DNA of 64,000 nucleotides from assembly GCF_000002075.1 (NCBI RefSeq), contig NW_004797341.1:785369-849368 (forward strand), in the 5' to 3' direction. The DNA is from Aplysia californica (Eukaryota). The position numbers and the translations under genes were made by a program. Below are positions 7,526 to 42,037 of this stretch, piece by piece. The notes under the pieces are model-generated. The model saw nothing but the letters and a program-made list of their open reading frames with translations, was not told the DNA's origin and did no database searches. Each line of letters opens with the position of its first letter. The first letter of the stretch is position 1.

Positions 7526-8211
7526 ACACCAAATAGTATCTTGTCTGTCATAATCACACCCGCCTTTTTTGTCCGTCATCATAACAAGGCCGACAAAAAT
7601 TTTGAAGGATACAGTCTTGGCAAAGGCAAAATTGATTTTCTTCTTGCTTTACTGTAGTCAGCTAATAAGTTCAAATACAATACATGTATCATGATTGAAC
7701 AGATTCAGATCAGATGTTTAAAATTAGCCACTGTCAAAATTAGAAAAATTGAAAGATTGGTTGCTGTCGGGTTTGACTGGTTACAGACACAAAGCATGGG
7801 GTACCGTATTTAGAAATGACTCATTTGATATAAGATATGGTGTCCAGCTCATGTCTATTCCCAATAGTTCTAGCGGTCCAGGGGATGAACGTTGCAGAGA
7901 TACAAACACGTCAGTCTTTTTCCCCCTCGGCAACTGATCATTATTACAATGATAGTCTTGACGTAGAGACATCTACGAAATGAATTGTGCGCTGGTCTAT
8001 GGAATCAAAAGTTGTCGTATGCTAGGCTCTATACATCAACACAACTTTTTGGTAAACAATCGAGATGACACAGGCGTGTGCATTTGAACGAATCGGTCTT
8101 TTATTTTTACACGCTCATAAAATGCAGACATTTCAGGCTCTACTTGTGACTTCTCTTTATACTATACATTACTTGCTCAGTGCCTGTAATTATCTACACA
8201 AAACCTTGTGT

Positions 8212-8494
8212 TTGCTATAACGAGCACTCGGATTCAACGAAATTTTAGGTCAGGCCCAGCGACCTCGTTGAATCCGAGTTCCACTGTAATTAAAAAAAAA
8301 CATTTTTATTCCACGAATTTTCACTGAAATTTTCCCATAATTTGGAGTAATTCTGCTAATTTGTGGAAGCACTGTGTAATTCTAATAACTTGTCTCCCTT
8401 CTTTTCTTTAGCCGTAGTCACGTTCATCGAGAAGTTGGACTCAACGAGGACAACAAGCCGGTCCCGGCAACCTCGCTGAATGCGACACCCACTG
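8212..8494. mobile_element. Two right-end fragments of pogo/Tc1-type MITEs
   Basis: ...CCTCGTTGAATCCGAGTTCCACTG|TA ends at 8286 and a related ...CCTCGCTGAATGCGACACCCACTG ends at 8494. Confidence 0.55.
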
Positions 8495-8689
8495 TGTACT
8501 ATGAACACGGGCCACCAAACTAAATGCAAAGAAAGAAATAATCAACAAAAGTCCAGGTTTGTCAAGAAGCAGCAACTGTATTCAATTCCATTTTGATTCA
8601 ACAGCAGCTTACATCAACAAAACAAAATGTATTAAACCAATTAGAAAAATAAGTCAGCAAGGACAGGTGAACACTTAAAAATTACGGGT

Positions 8690-10041
8690 TCTAAAAATGC
8701 AACAACTTTAATTAATCCATCCAAACGAAGAAGACAATAAAACACTTCAGCGAGAAATGATTATTTTTCTTGGGAAATAACCGGAACCAGATAGTCCCCA
8801 AGCTTTAGAAAGGGTGGATTATAACCCCCAACCTACCAGATTGAATTTAGACAAGTTGAGGCCCAGAAAAGCCTTTAAAGCTAAACATAAAATACTTACC
8901 AAATCAATACTTACTCTTGATGCATACTGTCGACAGTATTCGAGGATCCCAATCCTTTTGTTCCTAGAAGGCATTGTGCTTAACATCCTATGCATACAAA
9001 TGTGAGAGAGGGCAAAGTGGGTCAGTGTGGCAGCAAAGCCACCAAATCCCGCGGAGAAGGGGGCGCGTCCTTTGCATTCCTAGCCGTACTACTGAATTCG
9101 ACTCGATAAGATTTGAAGGCGACATAACAGCCGCCAGCAAAAGGGTTCCAAAATACATTTTAACCTCCTCGGTTCTGCAGCCATTGTTTGTATTTCCACA
9201 TTAAAAAAAAAAGTTTCATGACCTCCATAAGCTGAGGGCACAAAATTGATCACATCCGTCAATACCTATACCAATTAGAATCCACACTATTTATATAATT
9301 TTTTTTGTTCAATACGGTGCATATTTTCCCCCATAAACTGGAAGACAAAATGAAAATCGGAAGGAACTTTATATAAAGTGATAGGAAGAGTTAGAAAATT
9401 CAAGGGGCAGTTATAAAAGTGCACCCCCTCCCTCCTTCCGATAACCAAAATCCTCTTCCCATTTTATATTGTGCCAGTGTGGCCGAGAATCTCGATTTTG
9501 ATAAAGATCGCATTAACCCATGGTACCTGTACTGTATACTGTATGGAATGGAATCTCGACTTAGTGACCAAACCAACCCACTCCCAAGTCCTACTCGCAA
9601 CCCATAAAAAAGTCTCCATCGTTGAGTTTTCCAACGGACTCGTAAATCCGAATATTCCACGACAAAGCATCCTTTCCAATTTGCAAAACAAGGGATGGTT
9701 TCAGCCTTCTGGCAGTGTTTCCAGGCATTGCTTTGCAAGTCTCCAAGCAAAAAAGATCCATTGCTAGGTGTCTACATAGAAAAAATGTTGCATGTGATTC
9801 ATGCTTATTCAAATTACATGCTCATTCCTTCAGATCCCATGATTTCTTTATCCATTCCTTCCAATGATCCTAGTCCGTGTTTGTTCCGATTTCCATTCCC
9901 AATTCAGAGTCCAATGCATCCTCCTTCCAATTTATCCATTCCAAATCCATAATGCCTATAATCCAAATCCAATCCATTTCCTTTAGCCTTAGATTCCTTC
10001 CCTTCCAATCTTTTCCAATCCTTATCCATTTATGCATGAAA
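8690..10041 (-). other. SRSF1: Predicted terminal non-coding 3'UTR exon of the SR gene
   Basis: Strong acceptor CTAAC-ACTTTCTCTTTCCATTTTTTCCTTCTCATAG| at 10042, with a GGA-dense 5' part. Candidate ATTAAA at 8707-8712; the 3' end is uncertain. Confidence 0.55.
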
Positions 10042-10637
10042 CTATGAGAAGGAAAAAATGGAAAGAGAAAGTGTTAGAATGGCATCAAATAAACCTTTCA
10101 CATTGTTCGTCCTACTTTCAAAAGTTGACAAGAGTAGCAAAACCAGAGAATATCTCAAATGAATAAGGACACATAACTAAAAATGTATGACAACATGGTG
10201 ATCTATTCCAAAATCAAGCCGATATGGAGTTCATTAAAAAAAAAAAAGTAGGGATGCACAAAACACATTAAAAAGTTCAATAACATGAACAATAAAATGA
10301 AATGCAGTGCATGAGCAATGGTCAAAAATGTAATATTGGGGAAAAATTGACACAATGTCACAGAGAGCAAAGGTTACACATTTCTAAAGTACGGCCCCTT
10401 TCCTAAGACATTATACAAGCTTGCCCTTCAAGACTGTGCACGACAGACTTTCAAAATAAACCTATTTCCAAAAAAATATGCTTGGAGCTCCTAAATGCAT
10501 GGATGACAGCTTGATGGAGAGCAATACAGACCCATGAAACAATTGTGACGAGTATAAAAAAAATGGTTAAAAACAATAAAACAAAACAAAAAAACAATCC
10601 CCCCCAGATCATGGAATCCCCCCATCCTACATCATAC

Positions 10638-10889
10638 CATTGAGGCATTCATCCTCCGATAACGTAACGACAAAATAAGGAGCCACCGATGGACGGGAGG
10701 GAGAGAGGAAGCAAGGAGACCAGACAAGGCCGCATCCTCCTCGACCACTTTAGCCCTTCCCTTGACCTCTTCCATCCATCCGACTCCAGCGCTCCATCTC
10801 CTCTGGACGGTCTCCCATCCTGACCAGAGACGTTTTAGGAGCGTTCTGAGGAGTGAGAGGAGGCGACACCATGAGAGGGGTCTACTACA
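10638..10889 (-). other. SRSF1: Predicted non-coding 3'UTR (cassette) exon of the SR gene
   Basis: Acceptor CTTAAT..TGTTTGTTTAG| (tandem AGs), donor ATG|GTATGA. GC- and GGA-rich island in AT-rich surroundings, with no meaningful ORF. Confidence 0.5.
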
Positions 10890-11290
10890 CTAAACAAACA
10901 ATATTAAGATTCATTCCCAGTGCTTTAGAATGGTGCTCTACGGTTTATAAACAAATTGATTTCACACTTGTAACAAGAGTATATCTGATGCCAACACACC
11001 AAACTTTGAAAAACAACAACAACCAAACAAAAAGCCCCCCAACAACTACCCAATAAAACTGAATTTTTGTTTTTTCACTTCCTTTCATCAGAAAATCTCG
11101 ACGAGCACAATGGTAATTTCTTTCCAGATGGTAAAACAGAACTTGCATGAAACTGATACAAACCTAAACAAATAAAAAGTAAATTAAAAAACCCAACCCA
11201 CTTTTTCCAAAGTTAAGTTTGATAAATATTTTCCCACAAGAATACTCCTGAGTTTACAATGATTACTTTACTCAACACATTACACTTTAA

Positions 11291-11986
11291 CACGCCCCGC
11301 GAATTTCCTTACGCGCTCCACCCTGACTAGCCTGCGCCGACCTAGCGTCTTTAGAAACGAGGTTACGCCTTGAAGAGACTCTGCAGCCGAGATTTTGATG
11401 TGTATAGTTATTGGAAAAAGTTTCGTCTTCCGTTTGATAATGAAACAAAATTTTTCGGGCCAGTAGTTTTAGTATTAGAGCCAATCAAAGTGCGATCGCG
11501 TTACCGACACTTCAAAGGTGCCTCGACTTGTTGAAAAGCGACACAATTGAGTTAAAAAAAAAAAGGAAATAACGATGGATTTGAGCAAAAACATGCATGA
11601 CAAATCAGATGACTCAGATTTTGATGAAAATGTTGTAGCAAGAATTTGGGGCGATTCAGATTGATCAGATGTAGAAAATCTAGATTTTAGATCTAGGGCC
11701 CGGACTGCAAGGCTGAGAGAGAGAGAGAGAGAGTGACGGGTCGGGGTCGGACACCCCGGTTGAACTAAAGTTAGAACACTTCCAACAGTTTGCGCATACA
11801 TAGTTATATTTTTCAGAAACTACATTATTTTTCTTTTTTAACTTTTTATTTCTTTCAGGATTTTGGGAATTCGTTTAGATCTTTAAAATGTGTTTTTAAA
11901 CACCTTTATTCACGGGAGGGGGGTTCCTTCCCCTTGCTTACGATCTAGGAATGGACTTCCTGTCCAGACCATTAGGGTGTAATATG
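11291..11986. mobile_element. Possible decayed piggyBac-like element
   Basis: TTAA at both flanks with CA...TG ends. Internal acidic N-terminus-like peptide MDLSKNMHDKSDDSDFDE. TIR match is poor. Confidence 0.35.
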
Positions 11987-12502
11987 TTAAAGTATCAGAG
12001 TAGGAGAAAAAAAAGAACACTATTTGTTTGCTTAAAACATGCAAAAGCAGACAAGCCTACAAGCAATTTATGAGCAGCTGGTAGTACACGGGGGAGGAAA
12101 CAAAAAACCCCCTTCACTTTCAAATTTCCCATGACAAAAACAAGCCCCTAAAAAAATCTGACTAGAACTTGACAGTTAATAGCATTCATAAAAAATACTA
12201 GCAATTTAAATCTACTCCACCAATTTTTGTTTTTAGACCCATAAAAGAAAAATGAATCTACTCTGCAAACACCATGAAAGCTGTAAGGCCAAAAAAATGT
12301 CTACTGCATGAAAAGAGAAGTGATGGAATGATCATTTGACTGCTGCTTATGACAGACATATAACACCCTTTTGTCATTGAAAACGAAAAAACAAACAACC
12401 CCCCCAAAAAATAAAACCCCTAAATCAAACCCACCCCCAAGTGTACAAAACATACTCTAAAAAACATTCCCATCAAAATCAGGAGAGAAAATATCCCCTG
12501 AA

Positions 12503-12643
12503 TCATTTATAAGGAGAGTACGAACGCTCTCTATCTCTAATTGGAGAATATCTTGGGCTGCCTCTAGAGCGTCTTGGCGAGGGGCTGCGACTTCTGGACG
12601 AGCGGGGGTTGTCTTCCTTCACACGAATATATGCAACCTCACC
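12503..12643 (-). CDS. SRSF1: SRSF1/SRSF9-like SR protein, coding exon 4 (end of RRM2 plus short RS domain, stop)
   Basis: CAG|[11 protein letters not shown]...[13 protein letters not shown]...YK*; phase 0. Confidence 0.93.
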
Positions 12644-13311
12644 CTGTGACGAAACAACACATGATATGCTCTTCATAACATCGGGTGTCATAAGTTTACA
12701 TGCAATGAACCAAGAGTACAAAAATGATCTCTTTAAATTGAAGTTCCATGACGGGATTAAAGATTTTTACGCTATTGATTCAACACAAACTTTCTCTAAA
12801 ACAGATGCACTGTAACCTGTGAAATCACAACATAAAAATAAGTATCCTACTACTGTTTATTTGATTATTTATAACAACCGGACATTCTCAAAAAGGAACA
12901 ACAAAAGATAGAACAAGCACACTGGCTAATCATGGTTAAAAAACAATGGGGTAAAGAACAAATTTTAACCAAAGGATATCCATTTGTCTTAATCATAACC
13001 CATGCTGTGTGAAAGTTTTCTTTTGCAATTCGACAGGCACTTTATCAGTAAATTAAAGTACCCAATGAAACCCACGGTAATAAAAAACGAACAACAGTAT
13101 AGACCTGCACCTGAAACTCAGCCAAGGCTAGTCCGGTCCACCAAATTGTTGGCGCCACAGATCACTCCCTGGGCAGCATTCTGGGCCTTGATGAATATGG
13201 GCACACACCTCCAAATCAAATGATAAGAGTTCTCCCGAAAAAGTCCAAGACTAGAACCTTGAAAAAAAACCCCCAAACAAACAAACCCATCCCCCCATTA
13301 ATATTACATAC

Positions 13312-13484
13312 CTCATGAGACCTAAACTTAGTGTCATCCAGTTTCCTGACAGCATACTTCATGTCTTCTTTGCGTAGAAACTCTACAACACCTGTTCCGT
13401 CTTTGAACACATCTGCATAGCAAACATCGCCAGCTTCTCTCATGTGATCCTTCAAGTCCTGCCAACTGCCACTCGGAGGCAGCC
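13312..13484 (-). CDS. SRSF1: SRSF1/SRSF9-like, coding exon 3 (pseudo-RRM)
   Basis: [26 protein letters not shown]...KFRSHE with the SWQDLKD signature. AAG acceptor, GAG|GTATGT donor. Confidence 0.96.
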
Positions 13485-13616
13485 CTTGAGACATGGGAAG
13501 AGTAAAAGATAAACCCTCAGCTAACCACCATTAGGCCTGCAGCATGACACCAAACATTTCTAATGAGTGACAGCTCCTACATAATCTCTACATTTTACAC
13601 ACTGGTGATCATAACT

Positions 13617-16275: not shown

Positions 16276-16463
16276 CTGATACAAGAACTCTATACTGAGT
16301 CCGTCTTGATGGAGGACCCCCTCTGCCCCCTCCAAATCCTCCTCTTCCTCTAAAACCGCCTCTGCCCCCTCCCATTGCCCCACTGCCTCTTGGGAATTCG
16401 ACACGTAATGTGTAACCATCATAGTTGTAGCCATCTCTCTGTCTCACAGAATCTTCTGCATCT
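16276..16463 (-). CDS. SRSF1: SRSF1/SRSF9-like, coding exon 2 (end of RRM1, Gly/RGG linker)
   Basis: (R)[26 protein letters not shown]...[14 protein letters not shown](G). TTTTCAG acceptor, G|GTTTGT donor; phases fit the neighbouring exons. Confidence 0.95.
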
Positions 16464-16753: not shown

Positions 16754-17463
16754 NNNNNNNNNNNNNNNNNNNNNNNNNNNNNNNNNNNNNNNNNNNNNNN
16801 NNNNNNNNNNNNNNNNNNNNNNNNNNNNNNNNNNNNNNNNNNNNNNNNNNNNNNNNNNNNNNNNNNNNNNNNNNNNNNNNNNNNNNNNNNNNNNNNNNNN
16901 NNNNNNNNNNNNNNNNNNNNNNNNNNNNNNNNNNNNNNNNNNNNNNNNNNNNNNNNNNNNNNNNNNNNNNNNNNNNNNNNNNNNNNNNNNNNNNNNNNNN
17001 NNNNNNNNNNNNNNNNNNNNNNNNNNNNNNNNNNNNNNNNNNNNNNNNNNNNNNNNNNNNNNNNNNNNNNNNNNNNNNNNNNNNNNNNNNNNNNNNNNNN
17101 NNNNNNNNNNNNNNNNNNNNNNNNNNNNNNNNNNNNNNNNNNNNNNNNNNNNNNNNNNNNNNNNNNNNNNNNNNNNNNNNNNNNNNNNNNNNNNNNNNNN
17201 NNNNNNNNNNNNNNNNNNNNNNNNNNNNNNNNNNNNNNNNNNNNNNNNNNNNNNNNNNNNNNNNNNNNNNNNNNNNNNNNNNNNNNNNNNNNNNNNNNNN
17301 NNNNNNNNNNNNNNNNNNNNNNNNNNNNNNNNNNNNNNNNNNNNNNNNNNNNNNNNNNNNNNNNNNNNNNNNNNNNNNNNNNNNNNNNNNNNNNNNNNNN
17401 NNNNNNNNNNNNNNNNNNNNNNNNNNNNNNNNNNNNNNNNNNNNNNNNNNNNNNNNNNNNNNN
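16754..17463. other. Assembly gap (N run)
   Basis: Ns. Confidence 1.
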
Positions 17464-22278: not shown

Positions 22279-22436
22279 CTTGGGTCCTCAAATTCAACGA
22301 AAGCAAATGGTGGGCCTCTCTTGTTTTTCAAGTCAATAAATGTGATTTTTCCATATTTGTAAAACAAATCTTCGATATCTCTAGTTCTGATGTCTGGGGG
22401 CAAATTGCCGACGTAGATCCTGCTGTCACGAGCCAT
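22279..22436 (-). CDS. SRSF1: SRSF1/SRSF9-like, coding exon 1 (RRM1)
   Basis: [29 protein letters not shown]...[13 protein letters not shown]; AG|GTAATC phase-2 donor. Confidence 0.95.
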
Positions 22437-23331: not shown

Positions 23332-24387
23332 ATGATGTCATTGTCTGAAGAAGAATCGCAAAGTGTGCATGAAAATAACTTTGAGTCAGATACAGAAACA
23401 GAAGAAAGGAACAAAGATGTTAAAGCCAGTCAGGAATCTTCTTGTGAAGATCATGTTCAAACTCTGGGCATTAGTGATCAGTCAGCAGCCAGCAAACAAG
23501 CAAAGAAGTCTGAGAAAGCTCCGAAACCTAAAGTGAAGATAAAAACTCTTACAATTGATGGACAGCTAGTATACTTTTGTAAAATATGTGACAAGATTTT
23601 TACAAGGAGAAAAGACAAACTGAATCATGAGCTGGCTCACAGCGGAGAGTCAGTCCTCACTTGCACAGAATGTGGAAAGGAGTATCTGCATGAATCTAGT
23701 CTGGCTTCACATATGCGGACACATTCTGCTGATCAGCTGCACATGTGTGAACTTTGTCCAAAGATGTTTGCTCAGAGCCATCACTTAAAAACTCACATAT
23801 TGTCTCACTCTGAACCAAATGATTTTACGTGCAAAACTTGTTACGTTGAATTTGCCACTGCTGTAGAACTTAACCATCATATTCGTACTGAAATCAAGCT
23901 TGAAATTTCATATTACTGGTGTAAAATGTGCAAGGTTTATTGTTGCAGAAATCATGGCTTGCAGTGTGACAAAAACCTCCATGCATATCAGTGTTCTGCT
24001 TGCAATGAGCTGTTTTTCACGAATAAGAAGCTGAGGATACATATGAAAAAGTTTGCTCACCATTCAGTTCAAAAACCAAAGTTCATCGAACCTTTAAAGG
24101 AGCATGAGTTGTATCGTGGCAAGTGTGTGGATGGAAACAAGAAATCTTCTGTTCAAGGGGACAAGGAAAATGTGACAAGAAAGCAGATCGTTTATGGAAA
24201 CAGCAATCTAAACAAAAGATTTGCAAGTGATGATTTAGAAAATGAGCTTCCTCCAAAGAGGTTCAAGTTGTCTCCTCGGAAGCTGTGTGTTGAAGTTGAC
24301 AATTCGAGTACCTCAATGCAAGAGTCAGCGCCAGAAATGAAGATCGAATTCAAATCAGAAATAAGGTCTCCTGTAAAACAAAGAAAG
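23332..24387 (+). CDS. C2H2 zinc-finger protein, coding exon 1 (~5 fingers)
   Basis: Fingers CKICDKIF..H...H, CTECGKEY, CELCPKMF and others; AAG|GTTTGT phase-0 donor. The start may extend upstream via the acceptor at 23317. Confidence 0.85.
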
Positions 24388-41937: not shown

Positions 41938-42037
41938 NNNNNNNNNNNNNNNNNNNNNNNNNNNNNNNNNNNNNNNNNNNNNNNNNNNNNNNNNNNNNNN
42001 NNNNNNNNNNNNNNNNNNNNNNNNNNNNNNNNNNNNN
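41938..42037. other. Assembly gap (100 N)
   Basis: Ns. Confidence 1.

What the first reader, a model, noticed from the sequence alone, without database searches (positions are those of the whole stretch)
8690..12503. Candidate SRSF1 autoregulatory 3'UTR switch: cassette exon geometry straddling the NMD distance rule
Seen in sequence (minus strand): a donor AGA|GTATGT 47 nt after the stop (12456/12455), a 252-nt non-coding exon with good sites (10889-10638), and a strongly signalled terminal exon starting at 10041. Established: SR genes are autoregulated by unproductive splicing, human SRSF1 uses 3'UTR splicing for this, and junctions more than ~50-55 nt downstream of a stop trigger EJC-dependent NMD. 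Inference: skipping the middle exon leaves one junction at +47 nt (stable), while inclusion adds one at about +300 nt (NMD). That would be a purely non-coding poison cassette, possibly evolved independently in this lineage.
Basis: partly seen in the sequence, partly recalled or inferred. Interest (0 to 1): 0.8.

Follow-up and report, generated by a model that had tools for sequence, protein, structure and literature searches.

The report
Conserved spliced 3'UTR module in SRSF1

Summary
The gene is the Aplysia californica SRSF1 orthologue, on the minus strand.

Comparison with seven other heterobranch sequences supports part of the model:
- **Terminal acceptor (10042/10041) and the first ~55 nt of its exon:** 83-86% identical (E~1e-15), better conserved than coding exon 4. 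The exon head is the densest GGA cluster of the locus in four species.
- **Middle-exon donor (10638/10637):** its YG|GTAYG core is present in 8/8.
- **Use of that acceptor:** it explains NCBI's Aplysia isoform X2 (coding donor 12526) and the annotated Elysia protein. A sacoglossan mRNA splices onto it from about 23 nt after the stop.

Aplysia poly(A) reads show a 3,945-nt 3'UTR ending at 8558, with both UTR introns retained and no junction reads, but coverage was shallow and 3'-biased.

The autoregulatory NMD reading is plausible and unproven: no RNA shows the 10638>10041 junction. This is a new mollusc member of a known kind.

The parts
13312..13484 (-). Coding exon 3: pseudo-RRM (RRM2) with the SWQDLKD helix
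   Evidence: Translation. It is 53/57 identical to human SRSF1 RRM2, PDB 2M8D.
12503..12643 (-). Coding exon 4 ([16 protein letters not shown]...RSYSPYK*), stop TGA 12505-12503
   Evidence: It aligns with the relatives' last coding exon at 72-81% nucleotide identity.
12521..12529 (-). D0: donor inside the CDS, GAGAGC|GTTCGT (last exon base 12526)
   Evidence: This is the only junction that explains the C-terminus ...IRDREQRS* of NCBI Aplysia isoform X2 (P0001). The same junction type explains the Elysia crispata protein P0114...RERRSESH.
12449..12458 (-).
   Evidence: Present and weak on the ruler at -0.8. It shares the GTATG + two G5-7 runs signature found only at 13311, 12455 and 10637 in the 64 kb. 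The analogue in L006 mRNA is a junction about 23 nt after the stop. It is not conserved in sequence.
10846..12455 (-). 3'UTR intron 1 (runs from 12525 if D0 is used); retained in the main RNA
   Evidence: Sense-only 3'-tag reads lie inside it at 11941-12130, about 20x. The homologous interval is spliced out in L006/L007 mRNA.
11274..11990 (.). Interspersed repeat (transposon-like) inserted in intron 1, carrying AATAAA at 11910 and 11850
   Evidence: At least 500 candidate copies in the genome, 83-86% identical. Repeat-level depth in the DNA run X2. PAS scan.
10846..10885 (-). A1: pyrimidine tract and cag| of the conserved middle-exon acceptor (AG at 10847-10846)
Evidence: Ruler score 9.0, second best in the UTR. 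PPT + CAG|RNCGCT is present in 8/8 species. It is the second non-repetitive footprint peak of the whole UTR. It is used in Aplysia X2, the Elysia annotation and L006 mRNA.
10638..10845 (-). Middle exon, 208 nt, non-coding in the main isoform; it carries the X2 stop TAA at 10837-10835
   Evidence: Borders. Homologous exons are 127-190 nt in seven relatives. GC is 0.56 and GGA 5.2 per 100 nt, against 1.0-1.3 in the flanking introns (measured on 10889-10638).
10599..10637 (-). D2: donor ATG|GTATGA followed by G6 and G7 runs
   Evidence: The YG|GTAYG core sits at the syntenic place in 8/8 species. Signature. Use in RNA is not shown: relatives' mRNA contigs read through it.
10042..10637 (-). 3'UTR intron 2 (596 nt), retained in the main RNA
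   Evidence: Sense-only reads at 10041-10420, 2-9x, in single-copy sequence. It is also retained in L006/L007, and in L002 as far as its acceptor can be placed. L009 reads through D2 but ends before the terminal-exon block.
9989..10085 (-). A2 block: branch-point-like CTAAC, pyrimidine tract, cATAG| (AG at 10043-10042) and the first ~55 nt of the terminal exon
   Evidence: 83-86% identity over about 70 nt, E 1e-14 to 1e-16, in Elysia, Plakobranchus, Lymnaea and L006; also present in Bradybaena. Alignment A2. Top footprint peak of the UTR.
9821..10041 (-). GGA array: 27 GGA in 221 nt at the head of the terminal exon
   Evidence: Densest on either strand of the 64 kb, 8.6 sd above a composition-matched shuffle. 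In Elysia, Plakobranchus and Lymnaea the locus-wide sense-strand maximum starts 3-6 nt after A2.
8558..10041 (-). Terminal 3'UTR exon, running to the poly(A) site; variant signal AATACA at 8582-8577
   Evidence: Poly(A) tails (T30 loose ends before 8558) on 173, 166 and 88 reads, with 108-134x depth at 8521-8710, sense strand only. Sequence.

Best explanation
The 3,945-nt 3'UTR of Aplysia californica SRSF1 contains an ancient, alternatively spliced module: donor(s) at or just after the stop codon (12526 in the CDS, possibly 12456), intron 1, a conserved acceptor at 10845, a 208-nt middle exon, a conserved donor at 10638, intron 2, and a highly conserved acceptor at 10041 followed directly by a dense array of GGA, the motif read by SRSF1's own pseudo-RRM.

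Shown here:
- The main polyadenylated RNA keeps both UTR introns.
- The 10845 acceptor is used in real or annotated transcripts of three species.
- The sites and the GGA array are conserved across heterobranch gastropods.

Inferred:
- When SRSF1 protein is abundant it binds the GGA array as an exonic enhancer and activates the 10041 acceptor.
- Intron 2 is then removed, with or without prior removal of intron 1, which leaves an exon junction 142-255 nt (or, from the otherwise unspliced UTR, about 1.9 kb) downstream of the stop.
- That mRNA is marked for EJC-dependent nonsense-mediated decay, giving negative feedback as in human SRSF1.
- Removing intron 1 alone is decay-neutral, because its junction lies less than 50 nt after the stop or the stop moves into the middle exon.
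For: - **Gene identity:** P0001 is NCBI 'serine/arginine-rich splicing factor 1A isoform X2 [Aplysia californica]', 100% identical. Exon 3 is 53/57 identical to human SRSF1 RRM2, with SWQDLKD intact; that helix reads GGA (PMC7813835).
- **Main RNA keeps the UTR introns:** poly(A) site at 8558, sense-only reads inside both introns, no joints. The mRNA contigs of relatives do the same (L002, L009, L006). Human SRSF1's 3'UTR intron is also 'normally retained' and its splicing gives the NMD+ form (PMC3273819).
- **Splicing at A1:** the X2 C-terminus QRS* requires 12526>10845. Elysia P0114 ends RERRSESH and its CDS ends 20 nt into the homologous exon. L006/L007 mRNA, identical in two runs, joins stop+23 nt to the exon start that Elysia and Plakobranchus mark with ...acag|.
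- **Conservation:** the A2 block is 83-86% identical at E~1e-15, above coding exon 4 at 72-81%. A1 and the D2 core are present in 8/8. A2 and A1 are the top two non-repetitive footprint peaks of the UTR.
- **GGA array:** it is the locus maximum at A2 in four species.
- **Geometry:** tabulated.
Against: - No RNA in any species shows the D2>A2 (10638>10041) junction, which is the step that would make the transcript an NMD target.
- Three Aplysia poly(A) libraries gave no junction reads at all. They are 3'-tag-like, with 0x over 12321-12700 and at most 12x elsewhere, so they cannot exclude minor isoforms.
- D2 is conserved only as a 6-7-nt core and does not stand out in the 24-mer footprint.
- The 50-55-nt EJC rule has never been tested in molluscs; in Drosophila and C. 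elegans NMD is largely EJC-independent (my own knowledge).
- SRSF1 binding to the array is inferred from the motif alone.
- L002's A2 and GGA array are doubtful (4 GGA).
- The module was not seen in a more distant mollusc mRNA, L008.
Confidence: 0.55

Rival explanations
1. The module is an isoform or UTR switch that does not act through NMD. Splicing from 12526 or 12456 to 10845, and perhaps on to 10041, removes 1.7-2.4 kb of regulatory 3'UTR and, from the coding donor, swaps the last residues RSYSPYK for QRS. This would change mRNA localisation, stability, translation or nuclear retention. The GGA array would serve as an SRSF1 (or other GGA/GA-binding protein) platform on the mature mRNA rather than as a splicing enhancer that triggers decay.
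For: - The only junctions actually seen or annotated (12526>10845 in Aplysia X2; the same type in Elysia; stop+23>A1 in L006) are all decay-neutral under the 50-nt rule.
- The coding-donor isoform would end in Q-R-S in Aplysia, Lymnaea, L002, L009 and Bradybaena.
- Human SRSF1 is also regulated by nuclear retention of isoforms and at translation (PMC7764535).
- EJC dependence of NMD is unknown in molluscs.
Against: - A plain protein-binding platform does not need a conserved branch point, pyrimidine tract and invariant AG directly upstream of the array, nor a conserved GTAYG 340-600 nt further upstream.
- After QRS the alternative tails are not conserved: stop at once, 4-5 extra residues, or more than 30.
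Confidence: 0.25
2. One reading: transcripts are spliced at 12456, and a 252-nt cassette (10889-10638) is either skipped (single junction at +47, stable) or included (second junction at about +300, NMD).
For: - All four motifs exist.
- 12455 carries the same GTATG + double G-run signature as two validated donors.
- A junction less than 50 nt after the stop really occurs in a sacoglossan.
Against: - Acceptor 10889 is weak (-0.7), is not conserved, and lies inside the pyrimidine tract of the conserved acceptor at 10845.
- The annotated Aplysia alternative isoform uses donor 12526.
- Poly(A) RNA carries sequence from both introns.
- No 12456 junction has been seen, though coverage there was zero.
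Confidence: 0.1
3. Conservation of the A2 block reflects a structured RNA: a pre-miRNA-like hairpin, or a hairpin that pairs the pyrimidine tract with the GGA head to mask the splice site.
For: - A weak Rfam hit to mir-320 at 9981-10082, 24.5 bits, E 0.03.
- The Aplysia minimum-free-energy fold pairs the pyrimidine tract with the purine-rich head, -28.7 kcal/mol.
Against: - The hit is far below the family's gathering score of 55.5.
- Fold z-score is only -1.5, and 17 of 200 shuffles fold as well.
- The six-species consensus fold is -3.5 kcal/mol, with covariation term +0.2 and one compensatory pair out of 23.
Confidence: 0.05

Closest known systems
Human SRSF1 (SF2/ASF) 3'UTR-intron unproductive splicing (Ni 2007, Sun 2010 and Valacca 2010, as cited in PMC7764535 and PMC3273819)
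   Same: - Same gene family.
- The stop lies in the last coding exon and is followed by a multi-kb 3'UTR.
[quoted passage not shown]
- Splicing it would place a junction far downstream of the natural stop.
- The non-coding sequence is conserved as well as, or better than, coding sequence.
   Different: - Here there are two UTR introns around a non-coding middle exon.
- The first junction is observed or annotated at or within about 25-50 nt of the stop.
- A GGA array sits directly after the last acceptor.
- NMD sensitivity and autoregulation are shown in human cells and not at all here.
- Homology of the elements is untested: I did not compare with human DNA.
Ultraconserved poison cassette exons of SR genes (SRSF3, SRSF4, SRSF5, SRSF6, SRSF7; Lareau 2007; Lareau and Brenner 2015, PMC4379411)
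   Same: - Conserved non-coding or alternative exons in SR genes, linked to NMD.
[quoted passage not shown]
- Retained flanking introns are commonly seen in ESTs.
   Different: - Those exons lie between coding exons and introduce a premature stop.
- This exon lies after the normal stop, so it would act only through junction position.
- PMC4379411 does not treat SRSF1's 3'UTR or any mollusc.
SRSF2 (SC35) autoregulation by 3'UTR splicing (Sureau 2001, as cited in PMC7764535)
   Same: An SR protein promotes splicing events in its own 3'UTR, including a cassette exon, so that the natural stop is read as premature.
   Different: It is a different SR paralogue, and the effect is shown experimentally there. 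Here only the sequence architecture and its conservation are shown.

Membership tests
SRSF1/ASF-SF2 orthologue (SR protein) | N-terminal canonical RRM | tested here: met
   Exon 1-2 translation. PF00076 is precomputed on the 100%-identical P0001.
SRSF1/ASF-SF2 orthologue (SR protein) | Pseudo-RRM with the SWQDLKD helix | tested here: met
   Exon 3 is 53/57 identical to human SRSF1 RRM2 (2M8D, E 3e-33), with SWQDLKD intact.
SRSF1/ASF-SF2 orthologue (SR protein) | C-terminal RS domain | tested here: met
   Exon 4 encodes [33 protein letters not shown], a short RS tail.
SRSF1-type autoregulatory 3'UTR splicing coupled to NMD | 3'UTR intron(s) retained in the main mRNA | tested here: met
   Sense poly(A)-primed reads lie inside both introns and the poly(A) site is at 8558. 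Relatives' mRNA contigs L002, L009 and L006 retain them.
SRSF1-type autoregulatory 3'UTR splicing coupled to NMD | Alternative splicing within or into the 3'UTR, shown by RNA | tested here: inconclusive
   In Aplysia the only support is the NCBI isoform X2 model; there were no junction reads in three shallow 3'-biased runs. The feature is met in a relative: L006/L007 mRNA compared with the Elysia and Plakobranchus genomes.
SRSF1-type autoregulatory 3'UTR splicing coupled to NMD | A spliced isoform with a junction more than 50-55 nt downstream of the stop | tested here: inconclusive
   The geometry predicts 142-255 nt for the D2>A2 junction, and both sites are conserved. The junction itself was not seen in any RNA.
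SRSF1-type autoregulatory 3'UTR splicing coupled to NMD | The spliced isoform is stabilised when NMD or translation is blocked | not testable with these tools
   This needs cycloheximide or UPF1/SMG1 knockdown experiments.
SRSF1-type autoregulatory 3'UTR splicing coupled to NMD | The isoform ratio responds to the protein's own level | not testable with these tools
   Only the motif evidence is available: 27 GGA in 221 nt after A2, conserved in relatives.
SRSF1-type autoregulatory 3'UTR splicing coupled to NMD | Strong conservation of the non-coding regulatory sequence | tested here: met
   The A2 block is 83-86% identical against 72-81% for coding exon 4. It is the top footprint peak.
Classical poison cassette exon (premature stop between coding exons) | The cassette lies upstream of the normal stop and introduces a premature stop | tested here: not met
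   The middle exon lies about 1.66 kb downstream of the normal stop. Only the coding-donor isoform reads into it, and there it swaps the last 7 residues for 3.

The most novel reading that the evidence does not exclude
The heterobranch module is homologous to the vertebrate SRSF1 3'UTR element. In that case, 3'UTR-splicing autoregulation of SRSF1, built around a GGA enhancer array behind a regulated acceptor and a first junction kept inside the NMD-immune zone, would date back to the bilaterian ancestor and would be a deliberately two-step switch: a neutral step, then a poison step.
Probability: 0.15. Interest if true: 0.8.

Novelty: new member of a known kind. Interest (0 to 1): 0.6.

Why it matters
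SR-protein genes are the textbook case of self-regulation by unproductive splicing, but for SRSF1 itself the 3'UTR switch has been described in mammals, and the cross-phylum survey I read (PMC4379411) does not cover it.

A non-coding element in a mollusc SRSF1 3'UTR that is better conserved than the adjacent coding exon, and that pairs a splice acceptor with the protein's own binding motif, suggests the circuit is much older or has evolved repeatedly. It also gives exact coordinates for testing this in Aplysia or Lymnaea, both of which are experimental neurobiology models. The same experiments would test whether the exon-junction distance rule for NMD operates in lophotrochozoans, which is not known.

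Tried and rejected
- **Exact-ORF look-ups:** I looked up small ORFs inside the proposed exons to fetch Aplysia transcript contigs.
- **The genome search 'relatives':** this genome has no relatives in that collection.
- **Rfam on 8300-13600:** only two sub-threshold miRNA hits.
- **Folding:** the middle exon gives z = -0.4. The A2 hairpin gives z = -1.5 with no covariation. A structural explanation was rejected.
- **Metagenome scan:** probing JGI contigs with the conserved A2-head motif for spliced transcripts gave 30 hits, all by chance.
- **Pomacea isoform X2 look-up:** intended to extend the comparison to caenogastropods; not on record.
- **L008:** this more distant mollusc mRNA shows no module.
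- **X2 contig run:** it behaves as genomic DNA (flat ~57x, contig runs into intron 3), so it says nothing about RNA.
- **Sun et al. 2010:** the primary paper is not held in the library.
- Exons were searched by reference and full-length relatives by protein id.
Full report
**What is there**

The minus strand of the window carries a four-exon gene:
- exon 1 ends at 22279
- exon 2 ends at 16276
- exon 3 is 13484-13312
- exon 4 is 12643-12503, with stop TGA at 12505-12503

It encodes an RRM, a Gly/Arg linker, a pseudo-RRM and a short RS tail. A word search with the exon-2 ORF returned a 100% identical NCBI protein, 'serine/arginine-rich splicing factor 1A isoform X2 [Aplysia californica]' (P0001). 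The assembly has 927,310,431 bases in 4,332 contigs. Exon 3 is 53/57 identical to human SRSF1 RRM2 (PDB 2M8D) and keeps the SWQDLKD helix. That helix reads GGA (PMC7813835).

Exons were searched by reference, and full-length relatives by the protein ids the tools returned.

**Checking the observation**

They are not statistically remarkable as splice sites. On a crude consensus ruler the UTR has 29 donors at least as good as 12455 and 26 acceptors at least as good as 10889. Markov shuffles give as many, and 93% of shuffles contain a complete cassette model. Donor 12455 and acceptor 10889 score below every proven site of the gene, while acceptor 10041 scores as well as the proven ones.

**RNA evidence in Aplysia**

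Three 2026 poly(A) single-end runs turned out to be 3'-end-biased and strand-specific. They show:
- Poly(A) tails on 173, 166 and 88 reads at 8558, preceded by AATACA at 8582-8577.
- Sense-only reads inside both proposed introns: 11941-12130 at about 20x, and 10041-10420 at 2-9x. The stretch 9800-10889 is single-copy in the genome.
- No joint anywhere.

Coverage was 0x over 12321-12700 and at most 12x elsewhere, so minor isoforms cannot be excluded. The fourth run (X2) behaves as genomic DNA. Small runs of 38-118 M letters hold 76-83% of the words of the whole 3.8 kb. If they are RNA, as their size suggests, that again points to an unspliced main form, but their kind is only a guess. [quoted passage not shown]

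P0001 ends ...IRDREQRS*, whereas exon 4 reads ...[12 protein letters not shown]. The only junction that gives QRS* joins C12526 (donor GAGAGC|GTTCGT, inside the CDS) to A10845, behind cctcctctcactcctcag|. The new stop is TAA at 10837-10835.

**Comparative evidence**

I fetched these sequences through protein ids:
- the SRSF1 loci of Elysia crispata (L003), Plakobranchus ocellatus (L004), Lymnaea stagnalis (L005) and Bradybaena similaris (L011)
- mRNA contigs L002 and L009 (JGI), L010 (Logan, same protein as L009) and L006/L007 (Logan, a sacoglossan near Elysia)

Outside the coding exons, BLAST of the Aplysia 3' region finds one strong match in each of Elysia, Plakobranchus, Lymnaea and L006. 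Window 10058-9989 is 83-86% identical at E 1e-14 to 1e-16, while coding exon 4 is 72-81%. The block contains a branch-point-like TAAY, the pyrimidine tract, an invariant AG and the first ~55 nt of the exon...AAATGGATAAGGATTGGAAAAGATTGGATGGAAGGATTCTAA. Bradybaena has it too, with the head motif triplicated.

The other sites compare as follows:
- The 10845 acceptor (PPT + CAG|RNCGCT) is present in 8/8 sequences.
- A YG|GTAYG donor lies 127-208 nt downstream of it in 8/8.
- In an unbiased 24-mer footprint of the whole UTR against three lineages, the two top non-repetitive peaks are 10031-10008 and 10858-10835.

**Direct splicing evidence in relatives**

L006/L007, identical contigs from two runs, follow the Elysia genome through the stop and 23 nt beyond. 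They then continue with GTCGCTCAGAGAG..., which in Elysia and Plakobranchus sits about 1.3 kb downstream, immediately behind ...tttttacag| and ...ttcaacag|. The genomic donor there reads AAG|GCAAT.

The annotated Elysia protein P0114 ends RERRSESH, and its CDS ends 20 nt into the same exon. That is the coding-donor>A1 junction again, from a different annotation pipeline. All these mRNA contigs still read through D2, and L006/L007 carry intron 2 right up to A2.

**The GGA array**

The 221 nt after A2 hold 27 GGA. This is the maximum on either strand of the 64 kb and 8.6 sd above a composition-matched shuffle. GGA density is 4.3, 5.2 and 12.2 per 100 nt in the three UTR exon parts, against 1.0 and 1.3 in the introns. 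In Elysia, Plakobranchus and Lymnaea the locus-wide sense-strand maximum starts 3-6 nt after A2, and in Bradybaena it is in the top 1.3%.

Its use is untested. In its favour, the composite 'GTATG, G5+ within 30 nt, second G5+ within 40 nt' occurs exactly three times in the window and never in 100 shuffles. The three sites are 13311 (the proven intron-3 donor), 10637 (D2) and 12455. A junction within 25 nt of the stop also exists in a sacoglossan. Against it, the site is weak and not conserved.

**Mechanism**

Shown:
- the conserved splice signals
- the use of A1
- retention of the UTR introns as the default
- the conserved GGA cluster

Inferred: SRSF1 binds the array as an exonic enhancer and activates A2. 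Removing intron 2 puts a junction far downstream of the stop, which would mark the mRNA for EJC-dependent NMD:
- 255 nt with D1
- 197 nt after the relocated stop with D0
- 142-179 nt in relatives
- about 1.9 kb from the otherwise unspliced UTR (and coordinates)

Removing intron 1 alone is decay-neutral. The EJC rule itself is untested in molluscs.

The main rival is a UTR/C-terminus switch that does not use NMD. It fits the fact that every junction seen so far is decay-neutral, but it does not explain why a complete 3' splice site is conserved in front of the array. A structural explanation (hairpin or miRNA precursor) was tested and not supported.

**Verdict**

- the middle exon starts at 10845, not 10889
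- which upstream donor is used
- the default isoform, which retains the introns
- the decay step

It is a new mollusc member of the known class of SR-gene unproductive-splicing circuits. Whether it is homologous to the vertebrate element remains open.

Noticed in passing
window 11274-11990: A ~720-bp interspersed repeat sits inside 3'UTR intron 1, with at least 500 candidate copies in the genome at 83-86% identity. It carries AATAAA at 11910 and 11850 and an A-rich stretch. Sense-only 3'-tag reads pile up just upstream at 11941-12130 (~20x, against ~120x at the distal end). This is either a transposon-borne proximal poly(A) site, which would give a short UTR lacking the whole module, or internal priming.
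   Followed up: partly
window 7951-8520: A very high-copy repeat (depth 1e4-1e5 in the DNA run, reads on both strands) begins just downstream of the poly(A) site at 8558.
   Followed up: no
window ~8807-8830 and 8745-8747: Reads and DNA contigs from other individuals carry a C15 run (on the + strand) where the window has ACCCCCAACC. There is also a 2-nt insertion polymorphism at 8745-8747. Both are length polymorphisms in the terminal UTR exon, not splice junctions.
   Followed up: no
L011 (Bradybaena similaris) ~23950-24150: The conserved head motif of the terminal exon (GACTAGATGGATAAGGATTGGA) is repeated three times at a 51-nt period. In this lineage the GGA array has grown by tandem duplication.
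   Followed up: partly
L003 ~23255 and L004 ~19506: The genomic donor that matches the L006 mRNA junction reads AAG|GCAAT in both Elysia and Plakobranchus. This may be a conserved GC-AG intron with a weak donor, the type often linked to alternative splicing.
   Followed up: no
window 13311-13260, 12455-12380, 10637-10560: Three donors of this gene are each followed by two G5-7 runs and then a T-rich stretch. The composite occurs nowhere else in the 64 kb on either strand. It may be a lineage-specific intronic enhancer, as it is not seen after the homologous donors of the relatives.
   Followed up: partly
proteins P0009, P0011, P0015: NCBI isoforms of Liolophura sinensis SRSF1 diverge right after ...FRSHE, at the exon 3/4 border. 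Pomacea canaliculata isoform X2 has an alternative C-terminus (...SQKRSRDAFE). Alternative 3' ends of SRSF1 therefore seem common in molluscs beyond heterobranchs. I could not fetch their loci.
   Followed up: no
window 16754-17463 and 41938-42037: These are runs of N, the first of them inside intron 1 of the gene.
   Followed up: no
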